A stretch of 64,000 bases of DNA, from positions 47,926,001 to 47,990,000 of the forward strand of contig OZ038378.1 in the NCBI GenBank assembly GCA_964036045.1, written 5' to 3'. Under the pieces are notes generated by a model that was not told where the DNA came from, made no database searches, and saw only the letters and a list, made by a program, of their open reading frames with translations. The position numbers and the translations under genes were made by a program. Positions 10,815 to 34,727 of this stretch are shown here, in pieces. The stretch is from Eutreptiella sp. 'Long Island Sound 2002' (Eukaryota > Protista > Euglenida). Within the stretch, counting starts at the first letter, position 1; every line of letters begins with the position of its first letter.

Positions 10815-11143
10815 TCGGTGTATTGTCTCGTGCGTTCGGTGTCCTTGGCCACCTGGCTCCTGTCAACCGGTGTGCACGCTCGATGTGCTGTGTTTGCGGT
10901 GTCCTTGGCCACGTGGCTCCTGTTCATCGCTGTGCCCGCTCGGTGTGTTGTGTTGCATGTGCGGTGTCGGTGACCTCTTGGCTCCCGTTCACCGGTGTGC
11001 TCGCTCGGTGTGTTATGTTGTGTGTGTGGTGTCCTTGGCCACTTGGCTTCTGTTCGACGGTGTGCATGCTCGGTGTGTTGTGTTGCGTGTGCGGTGTCCT
11101 TTGGCACTTGGGTCCTGTTCACCGCTGTGCCTCTGTGGTGTGT
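10775..11143 (+). repeat. ~63-bp satellite, 6 units
   Basis: Units start near 10775, 10839, 10899, 10964, 11029 and 11094. Confidence 0.9.
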
Positions 11144-13000: not shown

Positions 13001-13671
13001 TTCACCCTTTGAAGGTTTGCGCTCTCAACGTACGTGGCAAAAGGAGGCCACAAGGGGCAACATTGATGTTTTGCAAATCATTTTGGTGCCAATCGACTCG
13101 GAAAGGTATTGGACTCAATGCTTTGGCTATGCCGTTAACCTACAATGGGCATGCTAAGGTGGCATGTTATGCGGGCTAAGATCCAAGCTAGCATGTTAAG
13201 CGGGCAAACTGACTAAACTCGGTGACATGTATCAAAATCTGAAGACTTCAGAACTCCGGCCTACCACCTCAAAATTGAATAATCCGAAAGTCAAATCAAT
13301 GATTTTTTGGACGTTGTGCACAATGTTGGCATCTAAAGTTGGGCACTTTGCAGCAAACTGCCAAAAGTTGAGGATACAAACGACCGATCCGTAAATCGCG
13401 CCCTTTTGCACATAGTGATTTCACAGGTGTATTCATTCTTTATGAATTTCCCCACAACAATGCATGCAGATCGATTTCTGCTGGCCGAAATCGAAGTCGC
13501 AAAATCCGCCAGATGCTGGGCGCCGCGAGCATGCGCAACGCCCGGCATCTTGCGCAATTTGTGATTTCGATTTCTGCCACCTGAAATCGATCTGAATGCA
13601 TTGGTGTGTGGAAATTTACAAAGATTGACACACCTGTGAAATCATTGTGCGCGAAACAGCGCGAGTTAGGG
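13001..13671 (+). repeat. Module A, outer copy (left-truncated; intact mirror at 33191-34034)
   Basis: Direct repeat of 18945-19610, containing an internal ~245-bp imperfect palindrome. Confidence 0.85.
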
Positions 13672-16600
13672 ATAGAGAATGAAATAAAAAGATAAGAAAA
13701 ACGCGACGAAAAAATTTTCTAAATAGCTGAAAATAAAGCTAATTACCATAAAAAACGGCTAGGACAAAAAGCGCGCAGCGAAACGCGTTAAAACACGATG
13801 ACGAAAATTGTGAGCTTAAATAGACAAATAAATAGCGCCGTAAGCGCCGTAACGTTAATAGGAACATAACGCCGTGCCCCTTGTCCCATAATACGGCGTC
13901 TAGGCAAAGAAAACTGCGTCGCGAGCAACGCGTAAAACTCGAAATTTTTTTTCGTAACGCGCCGCACCCCTGCACTCGCTTCCGCACGCCCTCTTTTTTT
14001 CACCATGTACCTCTCCCTCCCGCTGGTGCTCCACCCTCAGCGCCTTTACTTCCTCTTCGCTGCAGCCGGACATTACATGCCGTCAAGACCACGACCACCA
14101 AATTCAACTACAACTTCAAGTATGGGAAAAAGACTTTGGAGTACTTTCAACAACGACAACACGGAGGCCGACGGGTAACACGTAAGTCATTGAGTTGAAT
14201 GTGGTGTTGGTGCTCGCGCGTGGGTTGCGTAGAGTATAATTTTAACTTTTTTTCAAACGGAAAATCATTTTTACGGGTTTTACAGGAAGTTTTTTAGGGG
14301 AAACAGACAACCAGCGCCACAAGCAAGGCAAAAAAAAAGGAAAAAAAGACGACAGGGCACCACAGCACAGCACCACACGGCAGCACAGCGCCACAGGACA
14401 CAACACAGGGGAACAGGACACCGCAGGGGAGACGCCGAGCCACGGGAGACGCGGCCGGACACGGACACCAAGGCCAACACACACCACCAAACGACAACAC
14501 GAGGCAACCAGAGCCACCAGCGGACCCCCAAAAACACACACCGATACCAGGAACCAACAGCACCAAGCACCAGAAACAGCGCAGACCATGCGGACAGCAC
14601 AACACAAGGGCATCAACACAGCGCAGCGCAGCACCGCACAGGGCGCAGAGGACAGGGAACGCACAGCACGGGACCCCAGAACACACACAACAGACACCCA
14701 GCGGCAGAAAACAAACAACAGGCACAGGCCAAGACGCAAAAAAACAGCAGAGCACGACAGCACACCACCACACGACAGCACAGCGCCACAGAACACAACA
14801 CAGGGCAGCGGAACACCAAGGCACACCACACCAAACCACAGGGCGGCGAGCCACGCGGCCGGACAGGGACAGCACCACCAAAACACGACACCAGGACCCA
14901 CTAAAAGGCAACAGAGGACAGCCAGGCCCAACAGGAAACACCAAAACACGACGGGCAACACCACACAACACCAGCCAGCGCCAGAGGGGCGAGAGAGCAC
15001 CGCACAAAGAGCAACGACAGGGACAGCACCACCGAAGCAGACACCAGCACACCCCACAGCCCAGGACACACACGCGAGCCCCGCACCGCACCACCGGCAA
15101 GGCACAGACGAGGAAAAAAAAAAAGCAAAAAACAAACAGGAAGGAAAAAACAACAGGGGGGGGGGGCGGGGGCGACAACAAGGCGCCAAGGCCCAAGGCA
15201 CCCCGAGCCGGAACACACGGAACGCCAGGGACAACGGGGGCGCAAAAAAAAAAAGCCAGGGGAGGGAAAAAAAAAACAAAAAGGACGGAGGAAAGGCAGA
15301 AAAAAAAAGAAAAGGGGGAAGAGGGGGAGACAAGAAGACGCCAAGGCCCAAGGCACCCCGGGCCGGAAATCACGGAGCGCAAGAGACAACGGGGGCGCAC
15401 AAAGAGAAAAAAGCAAAAAAAAAGGCAGGGGAGGAGGAACAAAAGGAGCGAGGAAAAGCAGGAAAAAAAAGGGGGGGGAGGGAGGGGGAGACAAGAAAAC
15501 GCCAAGGCCCAAGGCACCCCGGGCCGGAAAACACGGAACGCCAGAGACAAGGGGGGCACACAAGGGGAAAAAAAAAGGGGGACGGAAAAAAAAGGGGGGG
15601 GGTGGGGGGCAAGACACCAAGAGCGGGCAGCCCGGGCCCGAAAACAAGGAGCGCCGGAGACAACCAGGGCGCATACAAAGAAAAAAAGGGCGACCCCAGC
15701 CCGGAGGGGGCCCAGCAAACAAAGAGCGCAGCAAGACCGGCCACAGGAAAAGGTGAGACGCACCACAACGCGCCCGGGAGGCCGGCCCGCCCGACCCGGC
15801 CAAGAGGGACACCCACACGCACACACGCACGGGACCCGGGCGTGGCGTCCTCCGACCCGAAAGGGGCGCTGTTGGCGTCAACACGAAACAGCCCCGGTGC
15901 ACCGGCCGAGTCCCTCGTCGAAAGAGGGACGGTACGGGAAACCGGACGCGTCAGTGACCAGGTCCACACACGCCAACCACCGCAGCGCACGCAGCCCAAG
16001 ACCGACGCTGGAGGGACCCGCCAGGGACAACCCCATCGCGGGGCCCCGAACGGGTACGACGCGGAGCGAGCCCAGCGCCGCTCCCAGGGGCCAGCGGCAG
16101 GCACAAAGAGCCCGGTTCTCGGCCGGCCTCCGCGTGCCCCGCGCAGCCATCCAGTAAAGCCGGGGGCGCAAGCCCACGGGCTGGGGAACGGCACCACGGC
16201 GTCGGGAAAGTCGACCGGAGCACCGAGAGCGACCGGACCGGACGAGGAGCGGCGCACCAAAGCGGGAACACCAGGCACGCCAGAGAGGCTCGCTGCCGGC
16301 CACAACTAAGGCACACGGACAGGTGCCAAGCAACAACGGCCACCGGGTGCCGCAAACCCGGGCAGCGCGCACAACACGCAACGAACCACGGCACAGGGAA
16401 AGGTGCCACGCAACACCAAACCCACACACCACGATGCCCAGCCAGGAGTGGCGGGGCACAAGCGGAGCGCGCACACAAGCACACACACACCCCGCCACCC
16501 CAGCCAGGGTTGGCGGGGCGCAGCCGAAACCCGAGCCCAAGCACAGACACCCACACCACACACCCCAGCCAGGACCGGTGAGGTACAAGCGGAGAGCGCA

Positions 16601-18770
16601 CACAAACATGCAAGCACCCTGACGCCCCAGCCAGGAGTGGCGGGGCGCAGCCGAAACCCGAGCCCAAGCACGCACACCCACACCGCACACCCCAGCCAGG
16701 AGTGGCAGGGTACAAGCGGAGCAAGCACACAAACACACACACACACACGCCAACACCCCAGCCAGGAGAGGCGGGGCGCAGCGGAAACCAGAGCCCAAGC
16801 ACACCCACCCACACCGCGCACTGCAGCCAGGAGTGGCGGGGTACAAGCGGAGCAAGCACACAAACACACACACACACCCCAACACCCAAGCCAGGAGTGG
16901 CGGGGCGCAGCCGAAACCTGAGCCCAGGCACGCACACCCACACCGCACACCCCACCCAGGAGTGGCGGGGCACAAGCGGAGCGCCCACACAAGCACACAC
17001 ACACCCCAACACCCCAGCCAGGAGTGGCGGGGCGCAGCCGAAACCCGAGCCCAAGCACACGCACCAACGCCGCACACCCCAGCCAGGAGGGGCGGTGTAC
17101 AAGCGGAGCGCGCACACAAACACACACCGGCCCCAACACCTCAGCCAGGAGTGGCGGGGCGCAGCTGAAACACGAGCCCAAGCAAATAGACCCACACCGC
17201 ACACCCCAGCCAGGAGTGGCGGGGTACAAGCGGAGCGCGCACACAAACACGCACACCCCAACACCCTAGCCAGGAAAGGCGGGGAGCAGCCACAACCCGA
17301 GCCCAAAAACACACGCCCACACCGCACACCCCAGCCAGGAGTGGCAGGGCAGAAGCGGAGCGCGCACCAAGCACACACACACCCCAACACCCGAGCCAGG
17401 AGTGGCGGGGCGCAGCCGAAACCCGAGCCCAAGCACAATCATCCAAGCCGCACACCCCAGCCAGGAGTGGCGGGGTGCAAGCGGAGCGCGCACACAAGCA
17501 CACACAGCCCAACACCCCAGCCAGGAGTGGCGGGGTGCAAGCAGAGCGCGCACACAAGCACACACAGGCCAACACCCCAGCCAGGAGTGGCGGGGCGCAG
17601 CTGAAACCCGAGCGCCACCACACGCACCCACACCGCACAACTGAGACACGAGTGCCATGGTACAAGCGGAGTGCGCACACAAACACACACACACCCCAAC
17701 ACCCCAGCCAGGAGTGGCGGGGCGCAGCCGAAACCTGAGCCCAAGCACACACACCCACATTGCACACCCCAGCAAGGAGTGGCGGGGTACAAGCGGAGCG
17801 CGCACACAAGCACACACACACCCCAACACCCCGGCCAGGAGTGGCGGGGCGCAGCCGAAACCCGAGCCCAAGCACGCACACCCACACCGCACACCCCAGC
17901 CAGGAGTGGCGGGGTACAAGCGGAGCGCACACACAAGCACACACGGGCCCCAACAGCCCAGCCAGGAGTTGCGGGGCGCAGCCGAGACCCGAGCCCAAGC
18001 ACACACACCCACATCGTACACCCCAGCCAGGAGTGGCGGGGTACAAGCGGAGCGCGCACACAAACACACACAGGCCCCAACACCCCAGCCAGGAGTGGCG
18101 GGGCGCAGCCGAAACCCGAGCCCAAGCACACACACCCACACCGTACACCCCAGCCAGGAGTGGCGGGGTACAAGCGGAGCGCGAACGCAACCACGCACAC
18201 ACCCCATCACCCCAGCCAGGAGTGGCGGGGCGCAGCCGAAACCCGAGCCCAACTACAACCCTGACCCAAACACAAGCGCCACATAACAGTAGGAAACCCG
18301 GTGTCCATAGCCCGGGCACTGAGGCAGCCCGTGCCATGCAGGTGACCCGGCCAAACGAGATCCGGAGACCGGGAATAAGGCTGCATCCTAAGGCCTGCGC
18401 TGCTTTGGGACTCGAGGCGGAGCGTGCAACACCCAAGCGCCTCGGAACCCCAGTATCAAGAACATGCATGCATGCCTTGGGAACGGGATACGCCAGGAAG
18501 TCCGGTGAACCTCTAGGGTTCCGCCCAAAGGAGGGGACGTGCGCAAGCACGGGGGCACACCCTCCCCGCAAGACACGCAGGTCACGCTGGCGGCGATCAG
18601 CCCTCCTGGTGTTGCCCGGGGCCGCTTTGTTGGGGGCCACCAGTCAGGTCTAGCGGGACGTAAGCCGCCTCCCCTCTTCATGCGCGGAGCCTCTTCCTGT
18701 TCGTCACAGGGGCGACGCCAGGGGGAACCATGGGGCGCCTCTCCACGACCGAGTGCACCTACCTACCTCT
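13672..18770 (-). mobile_element. Composite GT/CA-rich non-coding element, copy 2 (5.1 kb)
   Basis: Unique head, dimeric satellite, conserved core, four GCGTTCCGTG..TTCCGGCCCGGGGTGCCTTGGGCCTTGGCG-type units, GT low complexity and a ~600-bp tail. It is bounded by module A on both sides. Confidence 0.65.
16436..18250 (-). repeat. Higher-order satellite: 29 monomers of ~63 bp alternating A/B around a conserved CCCCGCCACTCCTGGCTGGGG core
   Basis: The core recurs about every 63 bp. Downstream segments alternate between TACAAGCGGAGCG (A) and CGCAGCCGAAACCCGAG (B), with one A-A doublet at 17460/17519. Confidence 0.92.
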
Positions 18771-19820
18771 AATGTAACAGCGGATGCTTATTGTACTATC
18801 TATTGTTGCTCAATCTTTTTGGCAAGGGGGCCCTTTGCCCCCGCGCCCCCAACCCTTGGCGCGTGGTGTCCACAACATCTGAAGGCTACGATGTTGTCCG
18901 AAATAAGACACCTCGACAACGGTTCGAAGTGAAGAAAGTTCATGCTTTGAAGGTTTGTGCTCTCAACGTACGTGGCAAAAGGAGGCCACAAGGGGCAACA
19001 TTGATGTTTTGCAAGTCATTTTGGTGCCAATCGACTCGGAACGGTATTGGACTCAATCCTTTGGCTATGCCGTTAACCTACAATGGGCATGCTAAGGTGG
19101 CATGTTATGCGGGCTAAGATCTAAGCTAGCATGTTAAGCGGGCAAACTGACTAAACACGGTGACATGTATCGAAATCCGAAGAATTCAGAACTCCGGCCT
19201 ACCACCTCAAAATTGAATAATCCGAAAGTCAAATCAATGTATTTTTGGACGTTGTGCACAATGTTGGCATCCAAGGTTGGGCACTTTGCAGCAAGCTGCC
19301 AAACGTTGAGGATACAAACGACCGATCCGTAAATCGCGTCCTTTTGCACATAGTGATTTCACAGGTGTATTCATTATTTTGAATTTCCACACAACAATGC
19401 ATGCAGATTGATTTCTGGTGGCCGAAATCGAAGTCGCAAAATACGCCAGATGCCGGGCGCCGCAAGCATGCGCAATGCCCGGCATCTTGCGCAATTTGTG
19501 ATTTCGATTTCTGCCACCTGAAATCGATCTGAATGCATTGGTGTGTGGAAATTTACAAAGATTGACACACCTGTGAAATCATTGTGCGCGAAACAGCACG
19601 AGTTAGGGATTGGCGTGGCGTATCCTCCATTTCGGCAGCTTGCTGTAAGTGCCCAAGTTTGGATGCCGTAATTGTGCGCAAGGTGGTACGCTACATTGAT
19701 TGAACTATCTTGGCATTCCAATTGTTGCTTGATGGCATGGCTAAAGCATTGATCCCAATATCTTTCGGAGTGGATGTGCAGTAAAATGACTCGCAAAACA
19801 TCAATGTTGCCCCCTATGGC
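18771..19820 (+). mobile_element. Module A, full copy: MITE/foldback-like non-coding element
   Basis: ~100-bp imperfect inverted repeats (18992-19085 vs 19725-19818, AGGGGCAACATTGATGTTTTGC) enclose a second ~245-bp palindrome (19345-19590). Confidence 0.7.
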
Positions 19821-20906
19821 ATCCTGTTTCCACTTAGGTGGACAGCCCAACGGTTGGAAAATTAAACTGTCTCCACTTCACACCTTCACCAAGGTGTCAT
19901 ATTCTGCACAACATCTTGGCCTACAGATGTTGTAGACAAGAAGTGCCAAAGCTCGGGAGCAAAGAGGCTGAAGGCCTCCTTGCAAGAAAGGAAGGGCAAC
20001 AATAGATGCTAAAATCTGTTTTTCTAAGTACATTACAACCCATATGTAACCATTAGCTTGTGTATCTTCATTTAAAAGGTTTTCTTGAGTAACCGATGGC
20101 GGGGTAAGTGTGCCTATCTTTTGGGCAACTATTGTGTCCCCATGTGTGCCTATACTTACCTATAATTTCAGCAAAGGTACCAATCCTTTGGGCAGAATAA
20201 AACTGGTTTACCCGGATACATTGGAACATATGTGCAACTATCGGTTTGCATATTTCTTTTTCAAATTCTTCTTTGACAACCCGTTTGTTGTCCTCTGCTC
20301 CACAAGCCGAAGGCCGTTTAATTTGCTCCCATGAACGGATTGAGACTTTTATATATATATATATATATACTTATATATATACACACAAAATAAACATTGC
20401 AGCACGCGCATGCACGCGGCAGGCATCTGCCGTATTTTACAGTTTTGATTTCTGCCACCAAAAACAGATTTCAATGCATTGCTGTCTAAGGCCTTCTAAA
20501 GATCAATAGCGCGCCCCTCACCCCAATACAACCAGAAATGGTTTCCGGTTTGCCGACACTTGTGCTTGTTTCTTGTATTTGTCAAAGAAAACCTTGCTGA
20601 TTTTCCGCAATGCAAAATGAAGTCCACACAGAGCTAAAGTAGAGCAAGTCCAGGCACCGGAGCAAAATGAACTCAGGATAAATCCTTCGGGGTCATAACA
20701 TGTCTAACAAAGAAGGGCTGCACAAAGACAATGCAGCCTTAAACACAATGCTTCAGTGAAATATGAACAAAACAAATGATCTTATAAAGTAAAATGGCAG
20801 TATTTTGGCCACCAAGATAGTCCCAAGCACTTCTAGGCACTCCCCCTTACATCCATTCCTCGCATGCGGGGAATCATGAATTGGCTAAGTATGTGAACAA
20901 ATTTGG

Positions 20907-22006
20907 ATGTCCTCGAAGGCAGTTACTGAAAGCGACGCCAGCGGCAACTAGGGTCATTTCTCATCATCCGCATTTCACTGTCTGGAGCCATCGGCCGCAG
21001 AATCTGATAACTCAAAAATCGCCGCCCACCTGCAAAGCTCCCACCCCTCAGGCCCGGTTCAACGGCCGGAGAATTACATTGACGCTGCTTCTGCTACGTT
21101 AAAGATCGCCGTCGCCCAGCATCTCGAGTTACAATGTCTTCTGTCACAAATAGATCAGTTCCCCAGAACCCTACGTTTTCTTGTCACGGCTCCCGCAACA
21201 GGACTCTACCATGCCTGCACTCCCTCCCCTACTCGGGAAGAGCCGCTGCCGTCTACAACCTGCCTAACACAGATTCACGCTCCAAAGCAGAAGTCTCCAA
21301 AGCCGTGTAGGGATCACTACGCTGAAGGAAACAATGACAATTGGGCCCCACGACCCTCAGTGAAGCAAGTCCGTGTGCCAGACGCTGCCCCGGCATTTCT
21401 CACTACCAACCTTCCCTTTTTGATCGTCTGTCTCTGTATACTCATCTCGCGTCTTCACCGTGCAATGTACCATTCGTTCCATCCTACAACGCCGCTACGG
21501 CGTATGGGCCAGAAGGGCTGCTCCCATCGCAAATGCCGCGTACGACGGAAGGGACTGACGCGGCGAAGTCTACTCTCTACCGGTTTTCTACAAGCCTACT
21601 GCCAAAGACAAACTCGGCTGATCCCTCAGCAGATTTGATCCCGCACTACGCGCTAGGCAACCTGCACGCTGTAGGATAGGGGTAGGAAGAACACCGACGA
21701 GCTGTGGATAGCTGCTGAAGCTTTAAGTTTTTCCTGGGCGCTTGGCACCGCACAGTCGTGCGGCAGTTTTCTGTGTTCGGCAACAAGAGGACGAAAGTAT
21801 GTCGGGTTTGCGAGTTCTTCCGGGCGAACCAGCTGACTTATTTCTGCAAACACGTCTCAATGACGAACACTCTGACCGATCGGCAGTGCGGCTGTGGGTT
21901 TATCAACTTTGAACGAAGACTCGAATGCCTGCAGTGCACTAAACTGAAGCTTCGAGCTGAAGCCCTTGCGCACGATAACGAAGGAGCGAGGTGTCTAATC
22001 AAGTGA
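20907..22006 (+). pseudogene. Decayed ORF ending in a RanBP2-type zinc finger
   Basis: A stop-free frame from ~20955 to 21638, then a frameshifted segment with stops, ending DRQCGCGFINFERRLECLQC (W-x-C-x-C-x3-NF-xx-R-xx-C-xx-C with W replaced by R). Confidence 0.55.
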
Positions 22007-23346
22007 CACAGTTTCTGCTTTTATTTACCATATTGCGCTACTGAGTGTGCCTATATTTCTGTCATCAATACAAAGAAGACTTTGCGTGAATGTGCAAAAC
22101 AGATCACACACCAGTGACCCCAGGGTCGCGGACCAATGTCCGTTTCGGCATTTCTTCGTCGTGTTCCTCTTCTCGCTTGCGTCCTCTTCCTCTCTTCTGA
22201 GCTGTGCTCACAATACTCAACATGGCCTGTACCCAACGCCATGATTGTCACTGTCGTGACAGCGACTTGAGGTACACCCCGCTATATGGCTGCCTCTCGC
22301 TTCTTGGCGACGCCTTGGCGCCGCTCTTGAACTGCAGTGATGAAGGCAACAGTCACAGTACCTCAATCCGCACATGTAGCTCGCTGCACTGCTTGAAGCC
22401 TGTTGTTCTTTTCCCCTAGGGGTGAAACAGCAAAGTGTTTGAAACAGCGCCGTAGGCAGCAAATTGTCCAGCCAGCCCCGACACTGATCTGACACCAACA
22501 CGGTTATGCCAAACACACCCACACACAACACACACAGCTGCTTTTTGGGCACACAATCTACTGAGCACACCGCTAACAGATCATGACACATACTCTCCAA
22601 ACCACATTCCCAGCACGGCAACCTTCTCTGGCTCGTGGCACGTCCCAGAGACCCACGTTACTGTCAGTCAAAAGTTTACTTCAAAGTCGTCAACATAACT
22701 GTCACATCTCAATATTCTGTCACGTCCACAGTATGCCATTCATCTTTCCAGAGCCCTCTACGGAAGCCTCGAACATTGAGCTCTTGCTTCACCTAACTGC
22801 TTCTCTGCTTCCTGGGCTTTCATTTAGAAACCTCCAGAAGCTTTCAATCTCTTTTTCATGAGGTACTCTAGACTCAGGGTTTTCATTACTGCATTAAGCA
22901 AGATCCAGTAAGTCCTAGTCCTCACATCTTTCAAGTCCCAACCACACCCTGAAACAATGAACACACCCACAGTTTACTGCAAAGATAGCCACCCTCTAAA
23001 GGGCTAGGGTTTTTCCCGAAACAGTGACACACACTGTGTGCCTCCCAGGGTACAGCCCCCCAGGATCCCCAGGTATAACTCAGGCCCCTCCCACACATGC
23101 GAGGGTCCTCCCTATCTTACCCAGCTGTATCACTCACGGGCCCGCCAGCAAAACAAGACCATGGGGTTCGCCCGACCAACTACCACCCATTGTAGCAACC
23201 ACCATTTCCTCCTACCCCTCGCAACATCCCCTCTTCACCTCTCAAACCACACACAGCCCATGCAGCGCAGGCAGCACATATAGTATTCTATAAGGCCCAA
23301 GGGCCATGTGTGGAGTACTCTGTGTGTTTTCTTACCCCGAACTGCC

Positions 23347-23511
23347 TAAAAAGATAACAAAAGCACGCCCAAAAAACTTACTAAATAGCTGAAACTAAAG
23401 CTAATTAGCATAAACATCGCCGGAGAAGAAATTTGCGGCGATGTTTATGCTAATTAGCTTTAGTTTCAGCTATTTAGTAAGTTTTTTGGGCGTGCTTTTG
23501 TTATCTTTTTA
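23347..23511. other. Palindrome centre formed within a terminus of the composite-element family
   Basis: TAAAAAGATAACAAAAGCACGCCCAAAAAACTTACTAAATAGCTGAAACTAAAGCTAATTAGCATAAA (23347) aligns with TAAAAAGATAAGAAAAACGCGACGAAAAAATTTTCTAAATAGCTGAAAATAAAGCTAATTACCATAAA (13685). Confidence 0.85.
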
Positions 23512-24851
23512 GGCAGTTCGGGGTAAGAAAACACACAGAGTACTCCACACATGGCCCTTGGGCCTTATAGAATACTATATGTGCTGCCTGCGCTGCATGG
23601 GCTGTGTGTGGTTTGAGAGGTGAAGAGGGGATGTTGCGAGGGGTAGGAGGAAATGGTGGTTGCTACAATGGGTGGTAGTTGGTCGGGCGAACCCCATGGT
23701 CTTGTTTTGCTGGCGGGCCCGTGAGTGATAAAGCTGGGTAAGATAGGGAGGACCCTCGCATGTGTGGGAGGGGCCTGAGTTATACCTGGTGATCCTGGGG
23801 GGCTGTACCCTGGGAGGCACACAGTGTGTGTCACTGTTTCGGGAAAAACCCTAGCCCTTTAGAGGGTGGCTATCTTTGCAGTAAACTGTGGGTGTGTTCA
23901 TTGTTTCAGGGTGTGGTTGGGACCTGAAAGATGTGAGGACTAGGACTTACTGGATCTTGCTTAATGCAGTAATGAAAACCCTGAGTCTAGAGTACCTCAT
24001 GAAAAAGAGATTGAAAGCTTCTGGAGGTTTCTAAATGAAAGCCCAGGAAGCAGAGAAGCAGTTAGGTGAAGCAAGAGCTCAATGTTCGAGGCTTCCGTAG
24101 AGGGCTCTGGAAAGATGAATGGCATACTGTGGACGTGACAGAATATTGAGATGTGACAGTTATGTTGACGACTTTGAAGTAAACTTTTGACTGACAGTAA
24201 CGTGGGTCTCTGGGACGTGCCACGAGCCAGAGAAGGTTGCCGTGCTGGGAATGTGGTTTGGAGAGTATGTGTCATGATCTGTTAGCGGTGTGCTCAGTAG
24301 ATTGTGTGCCCAAAAAGCAGCTGTGTGTGTTGTGTGTGGGTGTGTTTGGCATAACCGTGTTGGTGTCAGATCAGTGTCGGGGCTGGCTGGACAATTTGCT
24401 GCCTACGGCGCTGTTTCAAACACTTTGCTGTTTCACCCCTAGGGGAAAAGAACAACAGGCTTCAAGCAGTGCAGCGAGCTACATGTGCGGATTGAGGTAC
24501 TGTGACTGTTGCCTTCATCACTGCAGTTCAAGAGCGGCGCCAAGGCGTCGCCAAGAAGCGAGAGGCAGCCATATAGCGGGGTGTACCTCAAGTCGCTGTC
24601 ACGACAGTGACAATCATGGCGTTGGGTACAGGCCATGTTGAGTATTGTGAGCACAGCTCAGAAGAGAGGAAGAGGACGCAAGCGAGAAGAGGAACACGAC
24701 GAAGAAATGCCGAAACGGACATTGGTCCGCGACCCTGGGGTCACTGGTGTGTGATCTGTTTTGCACATTCACGCAAAGTCTTCTTTGTATTGATGACAGA
24801 AATATAGGCACACTCAGTAGCGCAATATGGTAAATAAAAGCAGAAACTGTG

Positions 24852-25951
24852 TCACTTGATTGGACACCTCGCTCCTTCGTTATCGTGCGCAAGGGCTTCA
24901 GCTCGAAGCTTCAGTTTAGTGCACTGCAGGCATTCGAGTCTTCGTTCAAAGTTGATAAACCCACAGCCGCACTGCCGATCGGTCAGAGTGTTCGTCATTG
25001 AGACGTGTTTGCAGAAATAAGTCAGCTGGTTCGCCCGGAAGAACTCGCAAACCCGACATACTTTCGTCCTCTTGTTGCCGAACACAGAAAACTGCCGCAC
25101 GACTGTGCGGTGCCAAGCGCCCAGGAAAAACTTAAAGCTTCAGCAGCTATCCACAGCTCGTCGGTGTTCTTCCTACCCCTATCCTACAGCGTGCAGGTTG
25201 CCTAGCGCGTAGTGCGGGATCAAATCTGCTGAGGGATCAGCCGAGTTTGTCTTTGGCAGTAGGCTTGTAGAAAACCGGTAGAGAGTAGACTTCGCCGCGT
25301 CAGTCCCTTCCGTCGTACGCGGCATTTGCGATGGGAGCAGCCCTTCTGGCGCATACGCCGTAGCGGCGTTGTAGGATGGAACGAATGGTACATTGCACGG
25401 TGAAGACGCGAGATGAGTATACAGAGACAGACGATCAAAAAGGGAAGGTTGGTAGTGAGAAATGCCGGGGCAGCGTCTGGCACACGGACTTGCTTCACTG
25501 AGGGTCGTGGGGCCCAATTGTCATTGTTTCCTTCAGCGTAGTGATCCCTACACGGCTTTGGAGACTTCTGCTTTGGAGCGTGAATCTGTGTTAGGCAGGT
25601 TGTAGACGGCAGCGGCTCTTCCCGAGTAGGGGAGGGAGTGCAGGCATGGTAGAGTCCTGTTGCGGGAGCCGTGACAAGAAAACGTAGGGTTCTGGGGAAC
25701 TGATCTATTTGTGACAGAAGACATTGTAACTCGAGATGCTGGGCGACGGCGATCTTTAACGTAGCAGAAGCAGCGTCAATGTAATTCTCCGGCCGTTGAA
25801 CCGGGCCTGAGGGGTGGGAGCTTTGCAGGTGGGCGGCGATTTTTGAGTTATCAGATTCTGCGGCCGATGGCTCCAGACAGTGAAATGCGGATGATGAGAA
25901 ATGACCCTAGTTGCCGCTGGCGTCGCTTTCAGTAACTGCCTTCGAGGACAT
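24852..25951 (-). pseudogene. Mirror copy of the RanBP2-zinc-finger pseudogene
   Basis: Reverse complement of 20907-22006 with a few substitutions. Confidence 0.55.
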
Positions 25952-27039
25952 CCAAATTTGTTCACATACTTAGCCAATTCATGATTCCCCGCATGCGAGG
26001 AATGGATGTAAGGGGGAGTGCCTAGAAGTGCTTGGGACTATCTTGGTGGCCAAAATACTGCCATTTTACTTTATAAGATCATTTGTTTTGTTCATATTTC
26101 ACTGAAGCATTGTGTTTAAGGCTGCATTGTCTTTGTGCAGCCCTTCTTTGTTAGACATGTTATGACCCCGAAGGATTTATCCTGAGTTCATTTTGCTCCG
26201 GTGCCTGGACTTGCTCTACTTTAGCTCTGTGTGGACTTTATTTTGCATTGCGGAAAATCAGCAAGGTTTTCTTTGACAAATACAAGAAACAAGCACAAGT
26301 GTCGGCAAACCGGAAACCATTTCTGGTTGTATTGGGGTGAGGGGCGCGCTATTGATCTTTAGAAGGCCTTAGACAGCAATGCATTGAAATCTGTTTTTGG
26401 TGGCAGAAATCAAAACTGTAAAATACGGCAGATGCCTGCCGCGTGCATGCGCGTGCTGCAATGTTTATTTTGTGTGTATATATATAAGTATATATATATA
26501 TATATATATAAAAGTCTCAATCCGTTCATGGGAGCAAATTAAACGGCCTTCGGCTTGTGGAGCAGAGGAAAAACAAACGGGTTGTCAAAGAAGAATTTGA
26601 AAAAGAAATATGCAAACCGATAGTTGCACATATGTTCCAATGTATCCGGGTAAACCAGTTTTATTCTGCCCAAAGGATTGGTACCTTTGCTGAAATTATA
26701 GGTAAGTATAGGCACACATGGGGACACAATAGTTGCCCAAAAGATAGGCACACTTACCCCGCCATCGGTTACTCAAGAAAACCTTTTAAATGAAGATACA
26801 CAAGCTAATGGTTACATATGGGTTGTAATGTACTTAGAAAAACACATTTTAGCATCTATTGTTGCCCTTCCTTTCTTGCAAGGAGGCCTTCAGCCTCTTT
26901 GCTCCCGAGCTTTGGCACTTCTTGTCTACAACATCTGTAGGCCAAGATGTTGTGCAGAATATGACACCTTGGTGAAGGTGTGAAGTGGAGACAGTTTAAT
27001 TTTCCAACCGTTGGGCTGTCCACCTAAGTGGAAACAGGA

Positions 27040-28093
27040 TGCCATAGGGGGCAACATTGATGTTTTGCGAGTCATTTTACTGCACATCCACTCCGAAAGA
27101 TATTGGGATCAATGCTTTAGCCATGCCATCAAGCAACAATTGGAATGCCAAGATAGTTCAATCAATGTAGCGTACCACTTTGCGCACAATTACGGCATCC
27201 AAACTTGGGCACTTACAGCAAGCTGCCGAAATGGAGGATACGCCACGCCAATCCCTAACTCGTGCTGTTTCGCGCACAATGATTTCACAGGTGTGTCAAT
27301 CTTTGTAAATTTCCACACACCAATGCATTCAGATCGATTTCAGGTGGCAGAAATCGAAATCACAAATTGCGCAAGATGCCGGGCGTTGCGCATGCTTGCG
27401 GCGCCCGGCATCTGGCGTATTTTGCGACTTCGATTTCGGCCACCAGAAATCAATCTGCATGCATTGTTGTGTGGAAATTCAAAATAATGAATACACCTGT
27501 GAAATCACTATGTGCAAAAGGACGCGATTTACGGATCGGTCGTTTGTATCCTCAACGTTTGGCAGCTTGCTGCAAAGTGCCCAACCTTGGATGCCAACAT
27601 TGTGCACAACGTCCAAAAATACATTGATTTGACTTTCGGATTATTCAATTTTGAGGTGGTAGGCCGGAGTTCTGAATTCTTCGGATTTCGATACATGTCA
27701 CCGAGTTTAGTCAGTTTGCCCGCTTAACATGCTAGCTTAGATCTTAGCCCGCATAACATGCCACCTTAGCATGCCCATTGTAGGTTAACGGCATAGCCAA
27801 AGGATTGAGTCCAATACCGTTCCGAGTCGATTGGCACCAAAATGACTTGCAAAACATCAATGTTGCCCCTTGTGGCCTCCTTTTGCCACGTACGTTGAGA
27901 GCACAAACCTTCAAAGCATGAACTTTCTTCACTTCGAACCGTTGTCGAGGTGTCTTATTTCGGACAACATCGTAGCCTTCAGATGTTGTGGACACCACGC
28001 GCCAAGGGTTGGGGGCGCGGGGGCAAAGGGCCCCCTTGCCAAAAAGATTGAGCAACAATAGATAGTACAATAAGCATCCGCTGTTACATTAGA
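27040..28093 (-). mobile_element. Mirror copy of full module A
   Basis: Reverse complement of 18771-19820. Confidence 0.7.
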
Positions 28094-31000
28094 GGTAGGT
28101 AGGTGCACTCGGTCGTGGAGAGGCGCCCCATGGTTCCCCCTGGCGTCGCCCCTGTGACGAACAGGAAGAGGCTCCGCGCATGAAGAGGGGAGGCGGCTTA
28201 CGTCCCGCTAGACCTGACTGGTGGCCCCCAACAAAGCGGCCCCGGGCAACACCAGGAGGGCTGATCGCCGCCAGCGTGACCTGCGTGTCTTGTGGGGAGG
28301 GTGTGCCCCCGTGCTTGCGCACGTCCCCTCCTTTGGGCGGAACCCTAGAGGTTCACCGGACTTCCTGGCGTATCCCGTTCCCAAGGCATGCATGCATGTT
28401 CTTGATACTGGGGTTCCGAGGCGCTTGGGTGTCGCACGCTCCGCCTCGAGTCCCAAAGCAGCGCAGGCCTTAGGATGCAGCCTTATTCCCGGTCTCCGGA
28501 TCTCGTTTGGCCGGGTCACCTGCATGGCACGGGCTGCCTCAGTGCCCGGGCTATGGACACCGGGTTTCCTACTGTTATGTGGCGCTTGTGTTTGGGTCAG
28601 GGTTGTAGTTGGGCTCGGGTTTCGGCTGCGCCCCGCCACTCCTGGCTGGGGTGATGGGGTGTGTGCGTGGTTGCGTTCGCGCTCCGCTTGTACCCCGCCA
28701 CTCCTGGCTGGGGTGTACGGTGTGGGTCTGTGTGCTTGGGCTCGGGTTTCGGCTGCGCCCCGCCACTCCTGGCTGGGGTGTTGGGGCCTGTGTGTGTTTG
28801 TGTGCGCGCTCCGCTTGTACCCCGCCACTCCTGGCTGGGGTGTACGATGTGGGGGTGTGTGCTTGGGCTCGGGTCTCGGCTGCGCCCCGCAACTCCTGGC
28901 TGGGCTGTTGGGGCCCGTGTGTGCTTGTGTGTGCGCTCCGCTTGTACCCCGCCACTCCTGGCTGGGGTGTGCGGTGTGGGTGTGCGTGCTTGGGCTCGGG
29001 TTTCGGCTGCGCCCCGCCACTCCTGGCCGGGGTGTTGGGGTGTGTGTGTGCTTGTGTGCGCGCTCCGCTTGTACCCCGCCACTCCTTGCTGGGGTGTGCA
29101 ATGTGGGTGTGTGTGCTTGGGCTCGGGTTTCGGCTGCGCCCCGCCACTCCTGGCTGGGGTGTTGGGGTGTGTGTGTGTTTGTGTGCGCACTCCGCTTGTA
29201 CCATGGCACTCGTGTCTCAGTTGTGCGGTGTGGGTGCGTGTGGTGGCGCTCGGGTTTCAGCTGCGCCCCGCCACTCCTGGCTGGGGTGTTGGCCTGTGTG
29301 TGCTTGTGTGCGCGCTCTGCTTGCACCCCGCCACTCCTGGCTGGGGTGTTGGGCTGTGTGTGCTTGTGTGCGCGCTCCGCTTGCACCCCGCCACTCCTGG
29401 CTGGGGTGTGCGGCTTGGATGATTGTGCTTGGGCTCGGGTTTCGGCTGCGCCCCGCCACTCCTGGCTCGGGTGTTGGGGTGTGTGTGTGCTTGGTGCGCG
29501 CTCCGCTTGTGCCCTGCCACTCCTGGCTGGGGTGTGCGGTGTGGGCGTGTGTTTTTGGGCTCGGGTTGTGGCTGCTCCCCGCCTTTCCTGGCTAGGGTGT
29601 TGGGGTGTGCGTGTTTGTGTGCGCGCTCCGCTTGTACCCCGCCACTCCTGGCTGGGGTGTGCGGTGTGGGTCTATTTGCTTGGGCTCGTGTTTCAGCTGC
29701 GCCCCGCCACTCCTGGCTGAGGTGTTGGGGCCGGTGTGTGTTTGTGTGCGCGCTCCGCTTGTACACCGCCCCTCCTGGCTGGGGTGTGCGGCGTTGGTGC
29801 GTGTGCTTGGGCTCGGGTTTCGGCTGCGCCCCGCCACTCCTGGCTGGGGTGTTGGGGTGTGTGTGTGCTTGTGTGGGCGCTCCGCTTGTGCCCCGCCACT
29901 CCTGGGTGGGGTGTGCGGTGTGGGTGTGCGTGCTTGGGCTCAGGTTTCGGCTGCGCCCCGCCACTCCTGGCTTGGGTGTTGGGGTGTGTGTGTGTGTTTG
30001 TGTGCTTGCTCCGCTTGTACCCCGCCACTCCTGGCTGCAGTGCGCGGTGTGGGTGGGTGTGCTTGGGCTCTGGTTTCCGCTGCGCCCCGCCTCTCCTGGC
30101 TGGGGTGTTGGCGTGTGTGTGTGTGTGTTTGTGTGCTTGCTCCGCTTGTACCCTGCCACTCCTGGCTGGGGTGTGCGGTGTGGGTGTGCGTGCTTGGGCT
30201 CGGGTTTCGGCTGCGCCCCGCCACTCCTGGCTGGGGCGTCAGGGTGCTTGCATGTTTGTGTGCGCTCTCCGCTTGTACCTCACCGGTCCTGGCTGGGGTG
30301 TGTGGTGTGGGTGTCTGTGCTTGGGCTCGGGTTTCGGCTGCGCCCCGCCAACCCTGGCTGGGGTGGCGGGGTGTGTGTGTGCTTGTGTGCGCGCTCCGCT
30401 TGTGCCCCGCCACTCCTGGCTGGGCATCGTGGTGTGTGGGTTTGGTGTTGCGTGGCACCTTTCCCTGTGCCGTGGTTCGTTGCGTGTTGTGCGCGCTGCC
30501 CGGGTTTGCGGCACCCGGTGGCCGTTGTTGCTTGGCACCTGTCCGTGTGCCTTAGTTGTGGCCGGCAGCGTGCCTCTCTGGCGTGCCTGGTGTTCCCGCT
30601 TTGGTGCGCCGCTCCTCGTCCGGTCCGGTCGCTCTCGGTGCTCCGGTCGACTTTCCCGACGCCGTGGTGCCGTTCCCCACCCCGTGGGCTTGCGCCCCCG
30701 GCTTTACTGGATGGCTGCGCGGGGCACGCGGAGGCCGGCCGAGAACCGGGCTCTTTGTGCCTGCCGGTGGCCCCTGGGAGCGGCGCTGGGCTCGCTCCGC
30801 GTCGTACCCGTTCGGGGCCCCGCGATGGGGTTGTCCCTGGCGGGTCCCTCCAGCGTCAGTCTTGGGCTGCGTGCGCTGCGGTGGTTGGCGTGTGTGGACC
30901 CGGTCACTGACGCGTCCGGTTTCCCGTACCGTCCCTCTGTCGACGAGGGACTCGGCCGGTGCACCGGGGCTGTTTCGTGTTGACGCCAACAGCGCCCCTT

Positions 31001-33190
31001 TCGGGTCGGAGGACGCCACGCCCGGGTCCCGTGCGTGTGTGCGTGTGGGTGTCCCTCTTGGCCGGGTCGGGCGGGCCGGCCTCCCGGGCGCGTTGTGGTG
31101 CGTCTCACCTTTTCCTGTGGCCGGTCTTGCTGCGCTCTTTGTTTGCTGGGCCCGCTCCGGGCTGGGGTCGCCCTTTTTTTCTTTGTATGCGCCCTGGTTG
31201 TCTTCGGCGCTCCTTGTTTTCGGGCCCGGGCTGCCCGCTCTTGGTGTCTTGCCCCCCACCCCCCCCCTTTTTTTTTCCGTCCCCCTTTTTTTTTCCCCTT
31301 GTGTGCCCCCCTTGTCTCTGGCGTTCCGTGTTTTCCGGCCCGGGGTGCCTTGGGCCTTGGCGTTTTCTTGTCTCCCCCTCCCTCCCCCCCCTTTTTTTTC
31401 CTGCTTTTCCTCGCTCCTTTTGTTCCTCCTCCCCTGCCTTTTTTTTTTTTGCTTTTTTCTCTTTGTGCGCCCCCGTTGTCTCTTGCGTTCCGTGATTTCC
31501 GGCCCGGGGTGCCTTGGGCCTTGGCGTCTTCTTGTCTCCCCCTCTTCCCCCTTTTCTTTTTTTTTCTGCCTTTCCTCCGTCCTTTTTGTTTTTTTTTCCC
31601 TCCCCTGGCTTTTTTTTTTTGCGCCCCCGTTGTCCCTGGCGTTCCGTGTGTTCCGGCTCGGGGTGCCTTGGGCCTTGGCGCCTTGTTGTCGCCCCCGCCC
31701 CCCCCCCCCTGTTGTTTTTTCCTTCCTGTTTGTTTTTTGCTTTTTTTTTTTCCTCGTCTGTGCCTTGCCGGTGGTGCGGTGCGGGGCTCGCGTGTGTGTC
31801 CTGGGCTGTGGGGTGTGCTGGTGTCTGCTTCGGTGGTGCTGTCCCTGTCGTTGCTCTTTGTGCGGTGCTCTCTCGCCCCTCTGGCGCTGGCTGGTGTTGT
31901 GTGGTGTTGCCCGTCGTGTTTTGGTGTTTCCTGTAGGGCCTGGCTGTCCTCTGTTGCCTTTTAGTGGGTCCTGGTGTCGTGTTTCGGTGGTGCTGTCCCT
32001 GTCCGGCCGCGTGGCTCGCCGCCCTGTGGTTTGGTGTGGTGTGCCTTGGTGTTCCGCTGCCCTGTGTTGTGTTCTGTGGCGCTGTGCTGTCGTGTGGTGG
32101 TGTGCTGTCGTGCTCTGCTGTTTTTTTGCGTCTTGGCCTGTGCCTGTTGTTTGTTTTCTGCCGCTGGGTGTCTGTTGTGTGTGTTCTGGGGTCCCGTGCT
32201 GTGCGTTCCCTGTCCTCTGCGCCCTGTGCGGTGCTGCGCTGCGCTGTGTTGATGCCCTTGTGTTGTGCTGTCCGCATGGTCTGCGCTGTTTCTGGTGCTT
32301 GGTGCTGTTGGTTCCTGGTATCGGTGTGTGTTTTTGGGGGTCCGCTGGTGGCTCTGGTTGCCTCGTGTTGTCGTTTGGTGGTGTGTGTTGGCCTTGGTGT
32401 CCGTGTCCGGCCGCGTCTCCCGTGGCTCGGCGTCTCCCCTGCGGTGTCCTGTTCCCCTGTGTTGTGTCCTGTGGCGCTGTGCTGCCGTGTGGTGCTGTGC
32501 TGTGGTGCCCTGTCGTCTTTTTTTCCTTTTTTTTGCCTTGCTTGTGGCGCTGGTTGTCTGTTTCCCCTAAAAAACTTCCTGTAAAACCCGTAAAAATGAT
32601 TTTCCGTTTGAAAAAAAGTTAAAATTATACTCTACGCAACCCACGCGCGAGCACCAACACCACATTCAACTCAATGACTTACGTGTTACCCGTCGGCCTC
32701 CGTGTTGTCGTTGTTGAAAGTACTCCAAAGTCTTTTTCCCATACTTGAAGTTGTAGTTGAATTTGGTGGTCGTGGTCTTGACGGCATGTAATGTCCGGCT
32801 GCAGCGAAGAGGAAGTAAAGGCGCTGAGGGTGGAGCACCAGCGGGAGGGAGAGGTACATGGTGAAAAAAAGAGGGCGTGCGGAAGCGAGTGCAGGGGTGC
32901 GGCGCGTTACGAAAAAAATTTTCGAGTTTTACGCGTTGCTCGCGACGCAGTTTTCTTTGCCTAGACGCCGTATTATGGGACAAGGGGCACGGCGTTATGT
33001 TCCTATTAACGTTACGGCGCTTACGGCGCTATTTATTTGTCTATTTAAGCTCACAATTTTCGTCATCGTGTTTTAACGCGTTTCGCTGCGCGCTTTTTGT
33101 CCTAGCCGTTTTTTATGGTAATTAGCTTTATTTTCAGCTATTTAGAAAATTTTTTCGTCGCGTTTTTCTTATCTTTTTATTTCATTCTCT
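28094..33190 (+). mobile_element. Mirror copy of composite GT-rich element 2
   Basis: Reverse complement of 13672-18770. Confidence 0.65.
28610..30425 (+). repeat. Mirror copy of the 29-monomer dimeric satellite
   Basis: Reverse complement of 16436-18250, with the same A-A irregularity. Confidence 0.92.
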
Positions 33191-34034
33191 ATCCCTAACT
33201 CGCGCTGTTTCGCGCACAATGATTTCACAGGTGTGTCAATCTTTGTAAATTTCCACACACCGATGCATTCAGATCGATTTCAGGTGGCAGAAATCGAAAT
33301 CACAAATTGCGCAAGATGCCGGGCGTTGCGCATGCTCGCGGCGCCCAGCATCTGGCGGATTTTGCGACTTCGATTTCGGCCAGCAGAAATCGATCTGCAT
33401 GCATTGTTGTGGGGAAATTCATAAAGAATGAATACACCTGTGAAATCACTATGTGCAAAAGGGCGCGATTTACGGATCGGTCGTTTGTATCCTCAACTTT
33501 TGGCAGTTTGCTGCAAAGTGCCCAACTTTAGATGCCAACATTGTGCACAACGTCCAAAAAATCATTGATTTGACTTTCGGATTATTCAATTTTGAGGTGG
33601 TAGGCCGGAGTTCTGAAGTCTTCAGATTTTGATACATGTCACCGAGTTTAGTCAGTTTGCCCGCTTAACATGCTAGCTTGGATCTTAGCCCGCATAACAT
33701 GCCACCTTAGCATGCCCATTGTAGGTTAACGGCATAGCCAAAGCATTGAGTCCAATACCTTTCCGAGTCGATTGGCACCAAAATGATTTGCAAAACATCA
33801 ATGTTGCCCCTTGTGGCCTCCTTTTGCCACGTACGTTGAGAGCGCAAACCTTCAAAGGGTGAACTTTCTTCACTTCGAACCGTTGTCGAGGTGTCTTATT
33901 TCGGACAACATCGTGGCCTTGAGATGTTGTGGACACCACGCGCCAAGGGTTGGGGGCATGGGGGCAAAGGGCTTCCTTGCCAAAAAGATTGAGCAACAAT
34001 AGATAGTACAATAAGCATCCGCTGTTACATTAGA
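33191..34034 (-). repeat. Module A outer copy (844 bp), direct repeat of 27251-28093
   Basis: Homology runs from ATCCCTAACTCG to GTTACATTAGA in both copies, with scattered substitutions. Confidence 0.88.
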
Positions 34035-34700: not shown

Positions 34701-34727
34701 AATGCAGGGCAGAAAAGCCACAATGTC

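What the first reader, a model, noticed from the sequence alone, without database searches (positions are those of the whole stretch)
13001..33863. A 20.9-kb genomic palindrome with only a 13-nt loop
Seen: the arms are reverse complements over ~10.4 kb but differ by true substitutions (e.g. 23128/23730, 23068/23790, 22934/23924, 21996/24862, 21507/25351) plus small homopolymer indels, so identity is above 99%. Known: long palindromes with tiny spacers are usually unstable and arise by fold-back or breakage-fusion-bridge events, or exist as specialised structures such as ciliate palindromic rDNA. Inference: this is a recent fold-back duplication, a tolerated structural locus, or the hairpin end of a linear molecule joined across haplotypes.
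Basis: partly seen in the sequence, partly recalled or inferred. Interest (0 to 1): 0.8.

Follow-up and report, generated by a model that had tools for sequence, protein, structure and literature searches.

The report
Local inverted duplication forming 21-kb palindrome
A 10.4-kb stretch of non-coding repeat DNA in this alga's chromosome was copied backwards right next to itself, turning at a 6-letter mirror motif; this is a known kind of copying accident, here with both breakpoints readable to the base.

Summary
Arms 13001-23422 and 23436-33863 are reverse complements around a 13-nt spacer. They differ by 31 substitutions and 7 small indels (99.6% identity).

It is not rDNA, a hairpin chromosome end or a fold-back transposon. 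The arms hold only dispersed repeats and satellites; no gene was detected.

Comparison with other copies of the resident repeat families polarises the event. The right arm is the original: its outer 843-bp repeat runs on natively for 171 bp, and by family structure about 400 bp, past the arm end. The left arm is the copy. It starts abruptly inside that repeat, joined with 1 nt of microhomology to a repeat unit ("W") that is itself cut short.

Elsewhere in the genome, W-type units run on for about 0.9-1.2 kb into the very motif found at the inner end of the right arm, in the same orientation. So one local event replaced about 1 kb with a 10.43-kb inverted copy of the neighbouring DNA. The inner turn used a 6-bp inverted repeat (TCGCCG/CGGCGA) 13 nt apart.

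Best reading: a genuine fold-back inverted duplication made by template switching. An assembly artefact would need two unrelated false joins, but cannot be excluded without reads (about 15%). This is a known kind of rearrangement, of modest interest.

The parts
10774..13000 (+). W: the left flank. A 65-bp satellite (10774-11131) plus about 1.9 kb of a dispersed repeat unit, cut short at 13000.
   Evidence: about 50 matches elsewhere at 69-83% identity; eight other copies run on past the point matching 13000 and stay alike among themselves for 130-590 bp more, so W is broken here. W is a 70-76% inverted relative of the left-arm interior (11257-11767 against 16344-15809), so it has the same orientation as the right-arm element.
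13000..13001 (.). J1, the outer novel junction (W joined to the left arm), with 1 nt (T) of microhomology.
   Evidence: the window follows the W family up to 12998-13000, then switches to the exact reverse complement of 33863 downward. Base 13000 (T) fits both sides.
13001..23422 (+). Left arm: the new, inverted copy.
   Evidence: It begins 171 bp inside the 843-bp repeat, which the right arm carries complete.
13001..13673 (+). Truncated copy 'a' of the 843-bp repeat (673 bp).
16437..18252 (+). 65/127-bp satellite inside the composite element. Its mirror is at 28609-30424.
18768..19610 (+). Copy 'b' of the 843-bp repeat. Its mirror b' is at 27251-28094.
   Evidence: 96% identity to copy a and to a'.
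20860..23347 (+). F1: a dispersed 2.5-kb repeat. Its mirror is at 23511-25998.
   Evidence: dozens of copies at 78-87% identity, all ending at the position matching 23347.
23347..23441 (+). F2' head read on the + strand: 76 nt of the left arm, the 13-nt spacer and CGGCGA. This is the first ~95 nt of the 'F2' internal-region family.
   Evidence: The same family starts at 13676 and 33188, just inside the 843-bp repeat.
23417..23441 (.). J2, the inner junction: a 6-bp inverted repeat (TCGCCG at 23417-23422, CGGCGA at 23436-23441) around the 13-nt spacer 23423-23435.
   Evidence: F2 copies carry GCGGCGA or close variants at this position and then continue AACGCG, whereas the window continues TGTTT.
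23436..33863 (+). Right arm: the original copy, native with its right flank.
23436..23511 (-). F2' head in its inferred ancestral place and orientation. It is read here as the head of the element whose body is W.
   Evidence: in loci L021, L023, L024, L028 and L029, W is followed after about 0.9-1.2 kb by the reverse complement of the F2 start, in the same orientation as here.
33191..34034 (+). Complete copy a' of the 843-bp repeat. Bases 33864-34034 lie beyond the palindrome.
   Evidence: divergence from b' is uniform, 27 differences in 673 bp inside the arm and 6-7 in the 171 bp outside it; family units elsewhere run on to about 34266.

Best explanation
This is a genuine local inverted duplication.

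Inferred ancestral order: 65-bp satellite, W, about 1 kb of W's own continuation, the F2' head (minus orientation), F1, a spacer, a 6.8-kb composite element bracketed by 843-bp repeats, then flank Z.

In one event, about 1 kb between W (13000) and the F2' head was replaced by a 10.43-kb reverse-complement copy of the DNA lying just to its right (23436-33863).

Favoured path, of the FoSTeS/MMBIR type (inferred):
1. A strand growing rightwards left its template at 13000.
2. It re-primed with 1 nt of homology on the opposite strand at 33863.
3. It copied back leftwards through the whole right arm, the 13-nt spacer and CGGCGA.
4. Through the 6-bp inverted repeat TCGCCG/CGGCGA it flipped back (or snapped back on itself) and resumed rightwards through the right arm into Z.

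Shown: the palindrome, both junctions, the truncation of W, and the native continuity of the right arm with Z.
Inferred: the order of the switches, the ~1-kb deletion, and that the event happened in the cell.

The arms carry only repeats, so no function is proposed. It reads as a neutral structural variant. By substitution count it is more than ten times younger than the split between the two 843-bp repeats (0.30% against 4%).
For: - Palindrome and differences.
- Right arm native. Copy a' is about 96% like b' across all 843 bp, including the 171 bp outside the arm. Family units elsewhere run through 34034 to about 34266.
- Left arm cut. It starts at position 172 of that repeat, against a W unit that is itself truncated relative to eight other copies.
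- W and the F2' head fit one element. In five other loci W is followed after 0.9-1.2 kb by the reverse complement of the F2 start, in the orientation seen at 23436-23511. Removing 13001-23435 therefore restores a normal family unit minus about 1 kb.
- Inner junction. The F2 family carries GCGGCGA at that spot and then continues differently, which gives a 6-nt switch point.
- Spacer orientation. The + strand reading of the spacer fits nine F2 copies better than the - strand reading (score 110 against 61). This is what copying inward through the axis predicts.
- Both arms carry derived bases (6 left, 3 right).
- Nothing in the assembly above 87% identity offers an alternative path for the centre-proximal 3 kb, and nothing above 83% for W.
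- Inverted repeats of 5-9 bp with 3-12-bp spacers are reported to drive large palindromic duplications in yeast (review PMC7999016, read).
Against: - No reads, depth, optical map or second strain could be examined, so the existence of both junctions in real molecules is unproven.
- A 21-kb palindrome with a 13-nt spacer and a perfectly symmetric inner 295 bp per arm is expected to be unstable (PMC7999016). Yet the arms differ by 0.3%, which implies long persistence, unless the differences are allelic variants distributed between the arms by short-read polishing.
- The spacer-orientation evidence is modest: 12% of composition-preserving shuffles reach the observed score.
- The ~1-kb deletion is inferred from paralogous loci, not from an empty allele.
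Confidence: 0.6

Rival explanations
1. The same real inverted duplication, with the right arm original, but made by double-strand-break repair. A break falls in the ~1-kb stretch. The right-hand end is resected, and its 3' tail snaps back on the 6-bp inverted repeat. It copies itself for 10.4 kb, and the extended end is then joined to the W end by end joining with 1 nt of homology.
For: Same junction anatomy. Snap-back at 5-9-bp inverted repeats with 3-12-bp spacers is documented (PMC7999016). A blunt or 1-nt outer junction is typical of end joining.
Against: This path keeps the ancestral spacer orientation, so the - strand reading should resemble the F2 family. It scores 61, which is no better than random sequence of that composition (54 +/- 8), while the + strand reading scores 110.
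Confidence: 0.17
2. Assembly or library artefact. Fold-back chimeric long reads, or a haplotype or inversion mix-up, made the assembler turn back on itself. The real genome would then hold one copy of the arm, and the arm differences would be allelic variants or polishing noise.
For: Giant near-perfect palindromes with tiny spacers are a recognised long-read artefact (own knowledge). If this is the published Euglena gracilis assembly (PMC11252322), it was built from noisy PacBio Sequel reads of 8.6 kb mean length and polished with short reads. Such polishing could scatter heterozygous bases between two identical arms. Most indels are in simple runs.
Against: - It needs two unrelated false joins 10.4 kb apart, J1 with no shared sequence and J2 at a 6-bp repeat, plus loss of about 1 kb of real sequence.
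- The centre carries native family sequence, not an adapter and not a zero-spacer fragment end.
- The locus is internal, with gap-free flanks of at least 70-120 kb.
- No alternative contig holds W's continuation or the centre.
- Substitutions outnumber indel events 31 to 7, and derived bases sit on both arms.
- A heterozygous inversion would create no hairpin junction in any read.
Confidence: 0.15
3. Two-step breakage-fusion-bridge history with the left arm original. A break right of 23441 leads to snap-back and a much longer palindromic dicentric chromosome. A second break at 13000 is then healed by joining to W from elsewhere.
For: It explains the + strand spacer orientation and the fact that the right arm runs on past the left arm.
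Against: It makes a coincidence of the fact that W and the F2' head fit one family unit in the right orientation and spacing. It needs two events and a second break only 10 kb from the axis. No mirrored sequence is found in 120 kb to the left against 70 kb to the right.
Confidence: 0.05
4. A fold-back (FB-type) transposon, or a maintained functional palindrome such as a palindromic amplicon or a gene-conversion-protected gene palindrome.
For: Long inverted arms containing tandem sub-repeats recall FB elements (own knowledge).
Against: It is a single locus: no third copy of the centre above 87% identity. The outer ends are asymmetric, one native and one a breakpoint, and the composite element in the right arm has no target-site duplication. 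There is no rRNA, tRNA or Pfam-recognisable gene in the arms.
Confidence: 0.03

Closest known systems
Fold-back inverted duplications primed at short inverted repeats (yeast snap-back palindromic duplications; fold-back inversions of tumour genomes; review PMC7999016)
   Same: Head-to-head copies with a spacer of a few nucleotides. The turn sits at a 6-bp inverted repeat 13 nt apart, within or just beyond the reported range of 5-9 bp with 3-12-bp spacers.
   Different: This one is interstitial and resolved within 10.4 kb by a second junction. It is not a dicentric or terminal duplication. It is fixed in (or at least assembled from) a free-living protist, not a repair mutant or a tumour.
FoSTeS/MMBIR template-switch rearrangements and ODIRA (PMC4689423, PMC10766183)
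   Same: Two junctions with 1-6 nt of homology, an inverted copy placed next to its template, a small accompanying deletion, and all partners within about 12 kb.
   Different: ODIRA and DUP-TRP/INV-DUP give three copies with two inverted-repeat junctions. Here there are two copies, and only the inner junction uses an inverted repeat.
Large sex-chromosome palindromes (human Y P1-P8)
   Same: Arms of many kb with above 99% identity.
   Different: Those have kb-scale spacers, carry genes and are kept alike by gene conversion (own knowledge). This one has a 13-nt spacer and only repeats.
Palindromic rDNA of ciliates
   Same: A giant head-to-head palindrome formed at a short inverted repeat (own knowledge).
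   Different: No rRNA genes, no telomeres, and embedded in a 201-Mb record.

Membership tests
Fold-back / template-switch inverted duplication | Two adjacent copies in inverted orientation with a spacer of nucleotides, not kilobases | tested here: met
   10.4-kb arms and a 13-nt spacer.
Fold-back / template-switch inverted duplication | Inner junction at a pre-existing short inverted repeat or microhomology | tested here: met
   F2 family copies carry (G)CGGCGA at that position and then diverge from the window. This gives a 6-nt overlap with TCGCCG 13 nt upstream. The pre-existence of TCGCCG in this particular copy is inferred.
Fold-back / template-switch inverted duplication | One copy continuous with native flank, the other ending at a novel junction | tested here: met
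   the right arm continues natively; the left arm abuts a truncated W unit with 1 nt of homology.
Fold-back / template-switch inverted duplication | Junction-spanning molecules and doubled copy number in the organism | not testable with these tools
   No reads or depth are available. Exact-pattern scans of public metagenome contigs for both junctions found nothing.
Fold-back (FB-type) transposon | Multiple genomic copies sharing the same termini, flanked by target-site duplications | tested here: not met
   only the two arms match each other above 87%; asymmetric ends, and no target-site duplication around the composite element in the right arm.
Palindromic rDNA or linear hairpin replicon | rRNA genes, and chromosome ends at or near the arms | tested here: not met
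   no Rfam family; the position is 48 Mb into a 201-Mb record with unrelated flanks.
Long-read fold-back misassembly | Zero-spacer or adapter-bearing centre, identical arms, no independent outer junction | tested here: inconclusive
   The centre is native family sequence, the arms differ at 38 sites, and the outer junction is a separate breakpoint. These points argue against a misassembly, but only reads can settle it.

The most novel reading that the evidence does not exclude
The palindrome is real and old enough for both arms to have gathered their own substitutions. Euglena would then tolerate a 21-kb, almost spacer-less palindrome that would be rapidly broken or centre-deleted in yeast or mammalian cells. 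If it is transcribed, it would yield a 10-kb hairpin RNA able to feed small-RNA silencing of the resident repeat families (F1, F2/W, the 843-bp repeat).
Probability: 0.1. Interest if true: 0.55.

Novelty: new member of a known kind. Interest (0 to 1): 0.3.

Why it matters
If real, this is a cleanly resolved natural example of a template-switch or snap-back inverted duplication in a euglenid. Both breakpoints, the copy direction and the lost sequence can be read from the genome alone. It also raises the question of how a nearly spacer-less 21-kb palindrome persists. If it is an artefact, it flags a specific error to correct in a reference assembly. Either way it holds no genes and implies no new biology by itself.

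Tried and rejected
- Longer palindrome interrupted by an insertion. I fetched 120 kb to the left and 40 kb to the right of the window and compared everything left of 13001 with everything right of 33863. Only ordinary repeat-family matches at 75-94% appeared, so the idea was rejected.
- Left arm original at the centre, with the right outer end closed by annealing to a separate inverted 843-bp repeat downstream. I held this reading. It was rejected because a' is uniformly 96% like b' across the arm boundary, so a' is one native copy and not a hybrid.
- W ending at a natural element terminus at 12998 (my first reading). Rejected: the other copies continue beyond that point.
- The 843-bp repeats as LTRs. 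There is no TG..CA and no target-site duplication. Relatives form ~1.1-kb tandem arrays elsewhere.
- rRNA, tRNA and other RNA families: none.
- Pfam on the arm ORFs: none.
- Independent sequence for the junctions. Exact scans of metagenome contigs for the centre and for J1 gave 0 matches. Exact-protein look-ups of one ORF from each arm also found nothing. These blanks carry no weight.
- Heterozygous-inversion mix-up as the source of the hairpin. Rejected on logic: an inversion creates no palindromic junction in any read.
- The contig is not human. Earlier notes of this scan call the genome Euglena. I did not verify the species.
Full report
**1. The observation**

The window holds one giant inverted repeat. 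Its arms are 13001-23422 and 23436-33863, and the spacer is 23423-23435 (GAGAAGAAATTTG). BLAST of one arm against the reverse complement of the other gives one alignment of 10,430 columns at 99.607% identity.

A global alignment lists 31 substitutions (15 transitions, 16 transversions), spread evenly from 13602 to 23127. It also lists 7 indel events. Five are in A or G homopolymer runs, one is in a TA run, and one is a single T. The innermost 295 bp of each arm are identical.

The fifth is off by one.

In 224 kb around the locus this is the only duplicate above 99% identity. The other near-identical pairs are 0.7-1.6-kb direct repeats at 97-99%. There are no N runs in that span.

**2. Setting**

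The window is C1:47,926,001-47,990,000 of a 2.28-Gb assembly of 2,317 records, and C1 is 201 Mb long. Earlier notes of this scan call the genome Euglena. I did not verify the species, and it is not human.

The size and record count would fit the published E. gracilis assembly. That assembly used PacBio Sequel reads of 8.6 kb mean length, NextDenovo, three rounds of short-read polishing, Bionano and Hi-C, and has 46 chromosomes plus unplaced pieces (PMC11252322). The identity of the two is not proven.

**3. What the arms contain**

No rRNA, tRNA or other Rfam family is present. The arm ORFs have no Pfam match. Reading the left arm from the outside in:
- 13001-13673: a truncated copy "a" of an 843-bp repeat.
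- 13676-18767: an internal region that starts with a family I call F2 and holds a 65/127-bp satellite at 16437-18252.
- 18768-19610: a second copy "b" of the 843-bp repeat, 96% like a.
- 19611-20859: a spacer.
- 20860-23347: F1, a dispersed 2.5-kb repeat. Dozens of copies at 78-87% identity all end at the position matching 23347.
- 23347-23422: the first 76 nt of another F2 copy, called F2' here.

The 843-bp repeats are not LTRs. They have no TG..CA ends and no target-site duplication. Their relatives elsewhere form tandem arrays with a period of about 1.1 kb.

**4. Which arm is the original**

*Outer ends.* The right arm ends at 33863, but its 843-bp repeat a' continues to 34034. Copy a' differs from b' at the same rate inside the arm (27 differences in 673 bp) and outside it (6-7 in 171 bp). 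Family units elsewhere run on to about 34266. So the right arm is native with its flank Z.

The left arm begins abruptly at position 172 of that repeat. To its left lies W (10774-13000), a member of another dispersed family. Eight other W copies continue past the point matching 13000 and remain alike among themselves for 130-590 bp more. The window instead switches at 13000|13001 to the exact reverse complement of 33863 downward, with one shared T. So J1 is a true breakpoint that cuts both W and the 843-bp repeat.

*W and the centre belong together.* W is a 70-76% inverted relative of the left-arm interior, so it has the orientation of the right-arm element. In five other loci (L021, L023, L024, L028, L029) W is followed after about 0.9-1.2 kb by the reverse complement of the F2 start. 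That motif, in that orientation, is what lies at 23436-23511, the inner end of the right arm.

Deleting 13001-23435 from the window therefore restores an ordinary family unit that lacks only about 0.8-1.25 kb. W-type sequence makes up a very small part of the genome. By my rough estimate, finding it here by chance in the right orientation has a probability of about one in a thousand. I take this as the strongest single argument for three things: the event was local, the right arm is ancestral, and the left arm plus the spacer is the insert.

**5. The inner junction**

Nine F2 copies read ...AGCATAAAAAACGGCTAGGACAAAAAGTGCGCGGCGAAACGCG... The window's + strand reads ...AGCATAAACATCGCCGGAGAAGAAATTTGCGGCGA and then TGTTT, the mirror of the left arm. 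So CGGCGA to the right of the spacer is native F2 sequence, and the family's continuation is missing. The switch point is the 6-nt CGGCGA, whose complement TCGCCG lies 13 nt upstream.

The + strand reading of the spacer fits the family better than the - strand reading (summed score 110 against 61). The - strand reading is no better than random sequence of its composition (54 +/- 8). However, 12% of shuffles of the + strand spacer also reach 110, so much of the signal is purine richness. I treat the orientation as moderately supported.

**6. Mechanism**

A single path fits every point above:
1. A nascent strand moving rightwards through W disengages at 13000.
2. It re-primes with 1 nt of homology on the other strand at 33863.
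3. It copies leftwards through the whole right arm, the spacer and CGGCGA. This makes the left arm plus a flipped spacer.
4. Through the 6-bp inverted repeat it flips back to the original template, or snaps back on itself, and continues rightwards into the right arm and Z.

The net result is that about 1 kb is lost and 10.43 kb is gained in inverted orientation. This is a FoSTeS/MMBIR-type event with a fold-back inner junction.

The review PMC7999016 reports that inverted repeats of 5-9 bp with 3-12-bp spacers drive large palindromic duplications in yeast. It also reports that palindromes with longer, more similar arms and a shorter or absent spacer pose the higher risk to genome stability.

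The break-repair variant (snap-back of the right-hand end, then end joining to W) gives the same map but the opposite spacer orientation, so I rank it second. A two-step breakage-fusion-bridge history with the left arm ancestral would make the fit between W and F2' a coincidence, so I rank it low.

**7. Age**

Arm divergence is 0.30% in substitutions. That compares with 4% between repeat copies a and b, and 1.1-2.7% between nearby direct-repeat pairs.

Nine sites could be polarised with paralogues or ten F1 outgroups. The derived base is on the left arm at six sites and on the right arm at three. So both arms changed after the event, or the differences are allelic variants distributed between the arms during polishing.

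**8. Real or artefact**

An artefact would need all of the following:
- a false join at J1 with no shared sequence;
- a false hairpin turn at a 6-bp repeat;
- loss of about 1 kb of real sequence;
- consensus support for all of this inside a gap-free stretch.

The centre holds native family sequence, not an adapter and not a blunt fragment end. No other record carries W's continuation or a third copy of the centre. A heterozygous inversion cannot create a palindromic junction in any read.

Against this, I could examine no reads. The expected instability of such a palindrome also sits awkwardly with 0.3% divergence. I put a real rearrangement at about 0.8 over all mechanisms and an artefact at about 0.15.

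**9. Comparison and novelty**

This is a member of a known class, the fold-back or template-switch inverted duplication. It fails the tests for a fold-back transposon, for palindromic rDNA and for a hairpin replicon end.

It is an unusually legible example in a lineage where such events have not, to my knowledge, been dissected. It carries no genes and needs no new mechanism. Interest is 0.3.

The most novel reading still open is long-term tolerance of a nearly spacer-less 21-kb palindrome, possibly acting as a hairpin-RNA source against its own repeat families. I give that a probability of about 0.1.

Noticed in passing
window 21668-21851 (mirror about 25007-25190): A 184-bp segment inside the F1 repeat is inverted in this copy relative to all 30 or more other F1 copies listed, where it lies in the opposite orientation between the same two flanking blocks. 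It may be a small inversion within the element.
   Followed up: no
L022 and L025 (G000:C5:92,425,505-92,429,745 and 92,416,562-92,420,738): Two neighbouring copies of the W/F2 family carry their own inverted rearrangement. W plus 184 bp is followed by the F2 start in the opposite orientation to the usual one, and part of W's continuation is present in both orientations. This family may be prone to fold-back events.
   Followed up: partly
window 33191-34266; G000 C18:16.389-16.397 Mb, C17:2.146-2.153 Mb, C11:40.015-40.022 Mb, C3:114.591-114.596 Mb, C2:150.145-150.153 Mb: The 843-bp 'LTR-like' repeat belongs to a family that elsewhere forms tandem arrays with a period of about 1.1 kb (73-82% identity). 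Its first ~290 bp (33191-33477) are 79% self-complementary.
   Followed up: partly
window 1419-2645 (-): A 408-aa ORF with a DDE_1 endonuclease domain (PF03184, E 6e-20), as in pogo/Tigger-type transposases (the pogo/Tigger attribution is my own knowledge).
   Followed up: no
window 9084-10814 (-): A 576-aa ORF with a marginal treble-clef zinc-finger match (PF13451, 24.5 bits against a cut-off of 24). It lies next to the 65-bp satellite that heads W.
   Followed up: no
window 34264-35400: Flank Z just beyond the repeat family's end has one 89% match at G000:C14:9,505,671-9,506,808, and weaker family matches elsewhere. It contains 118-bp and 60-bp tandem repeats.
   Followed up: no
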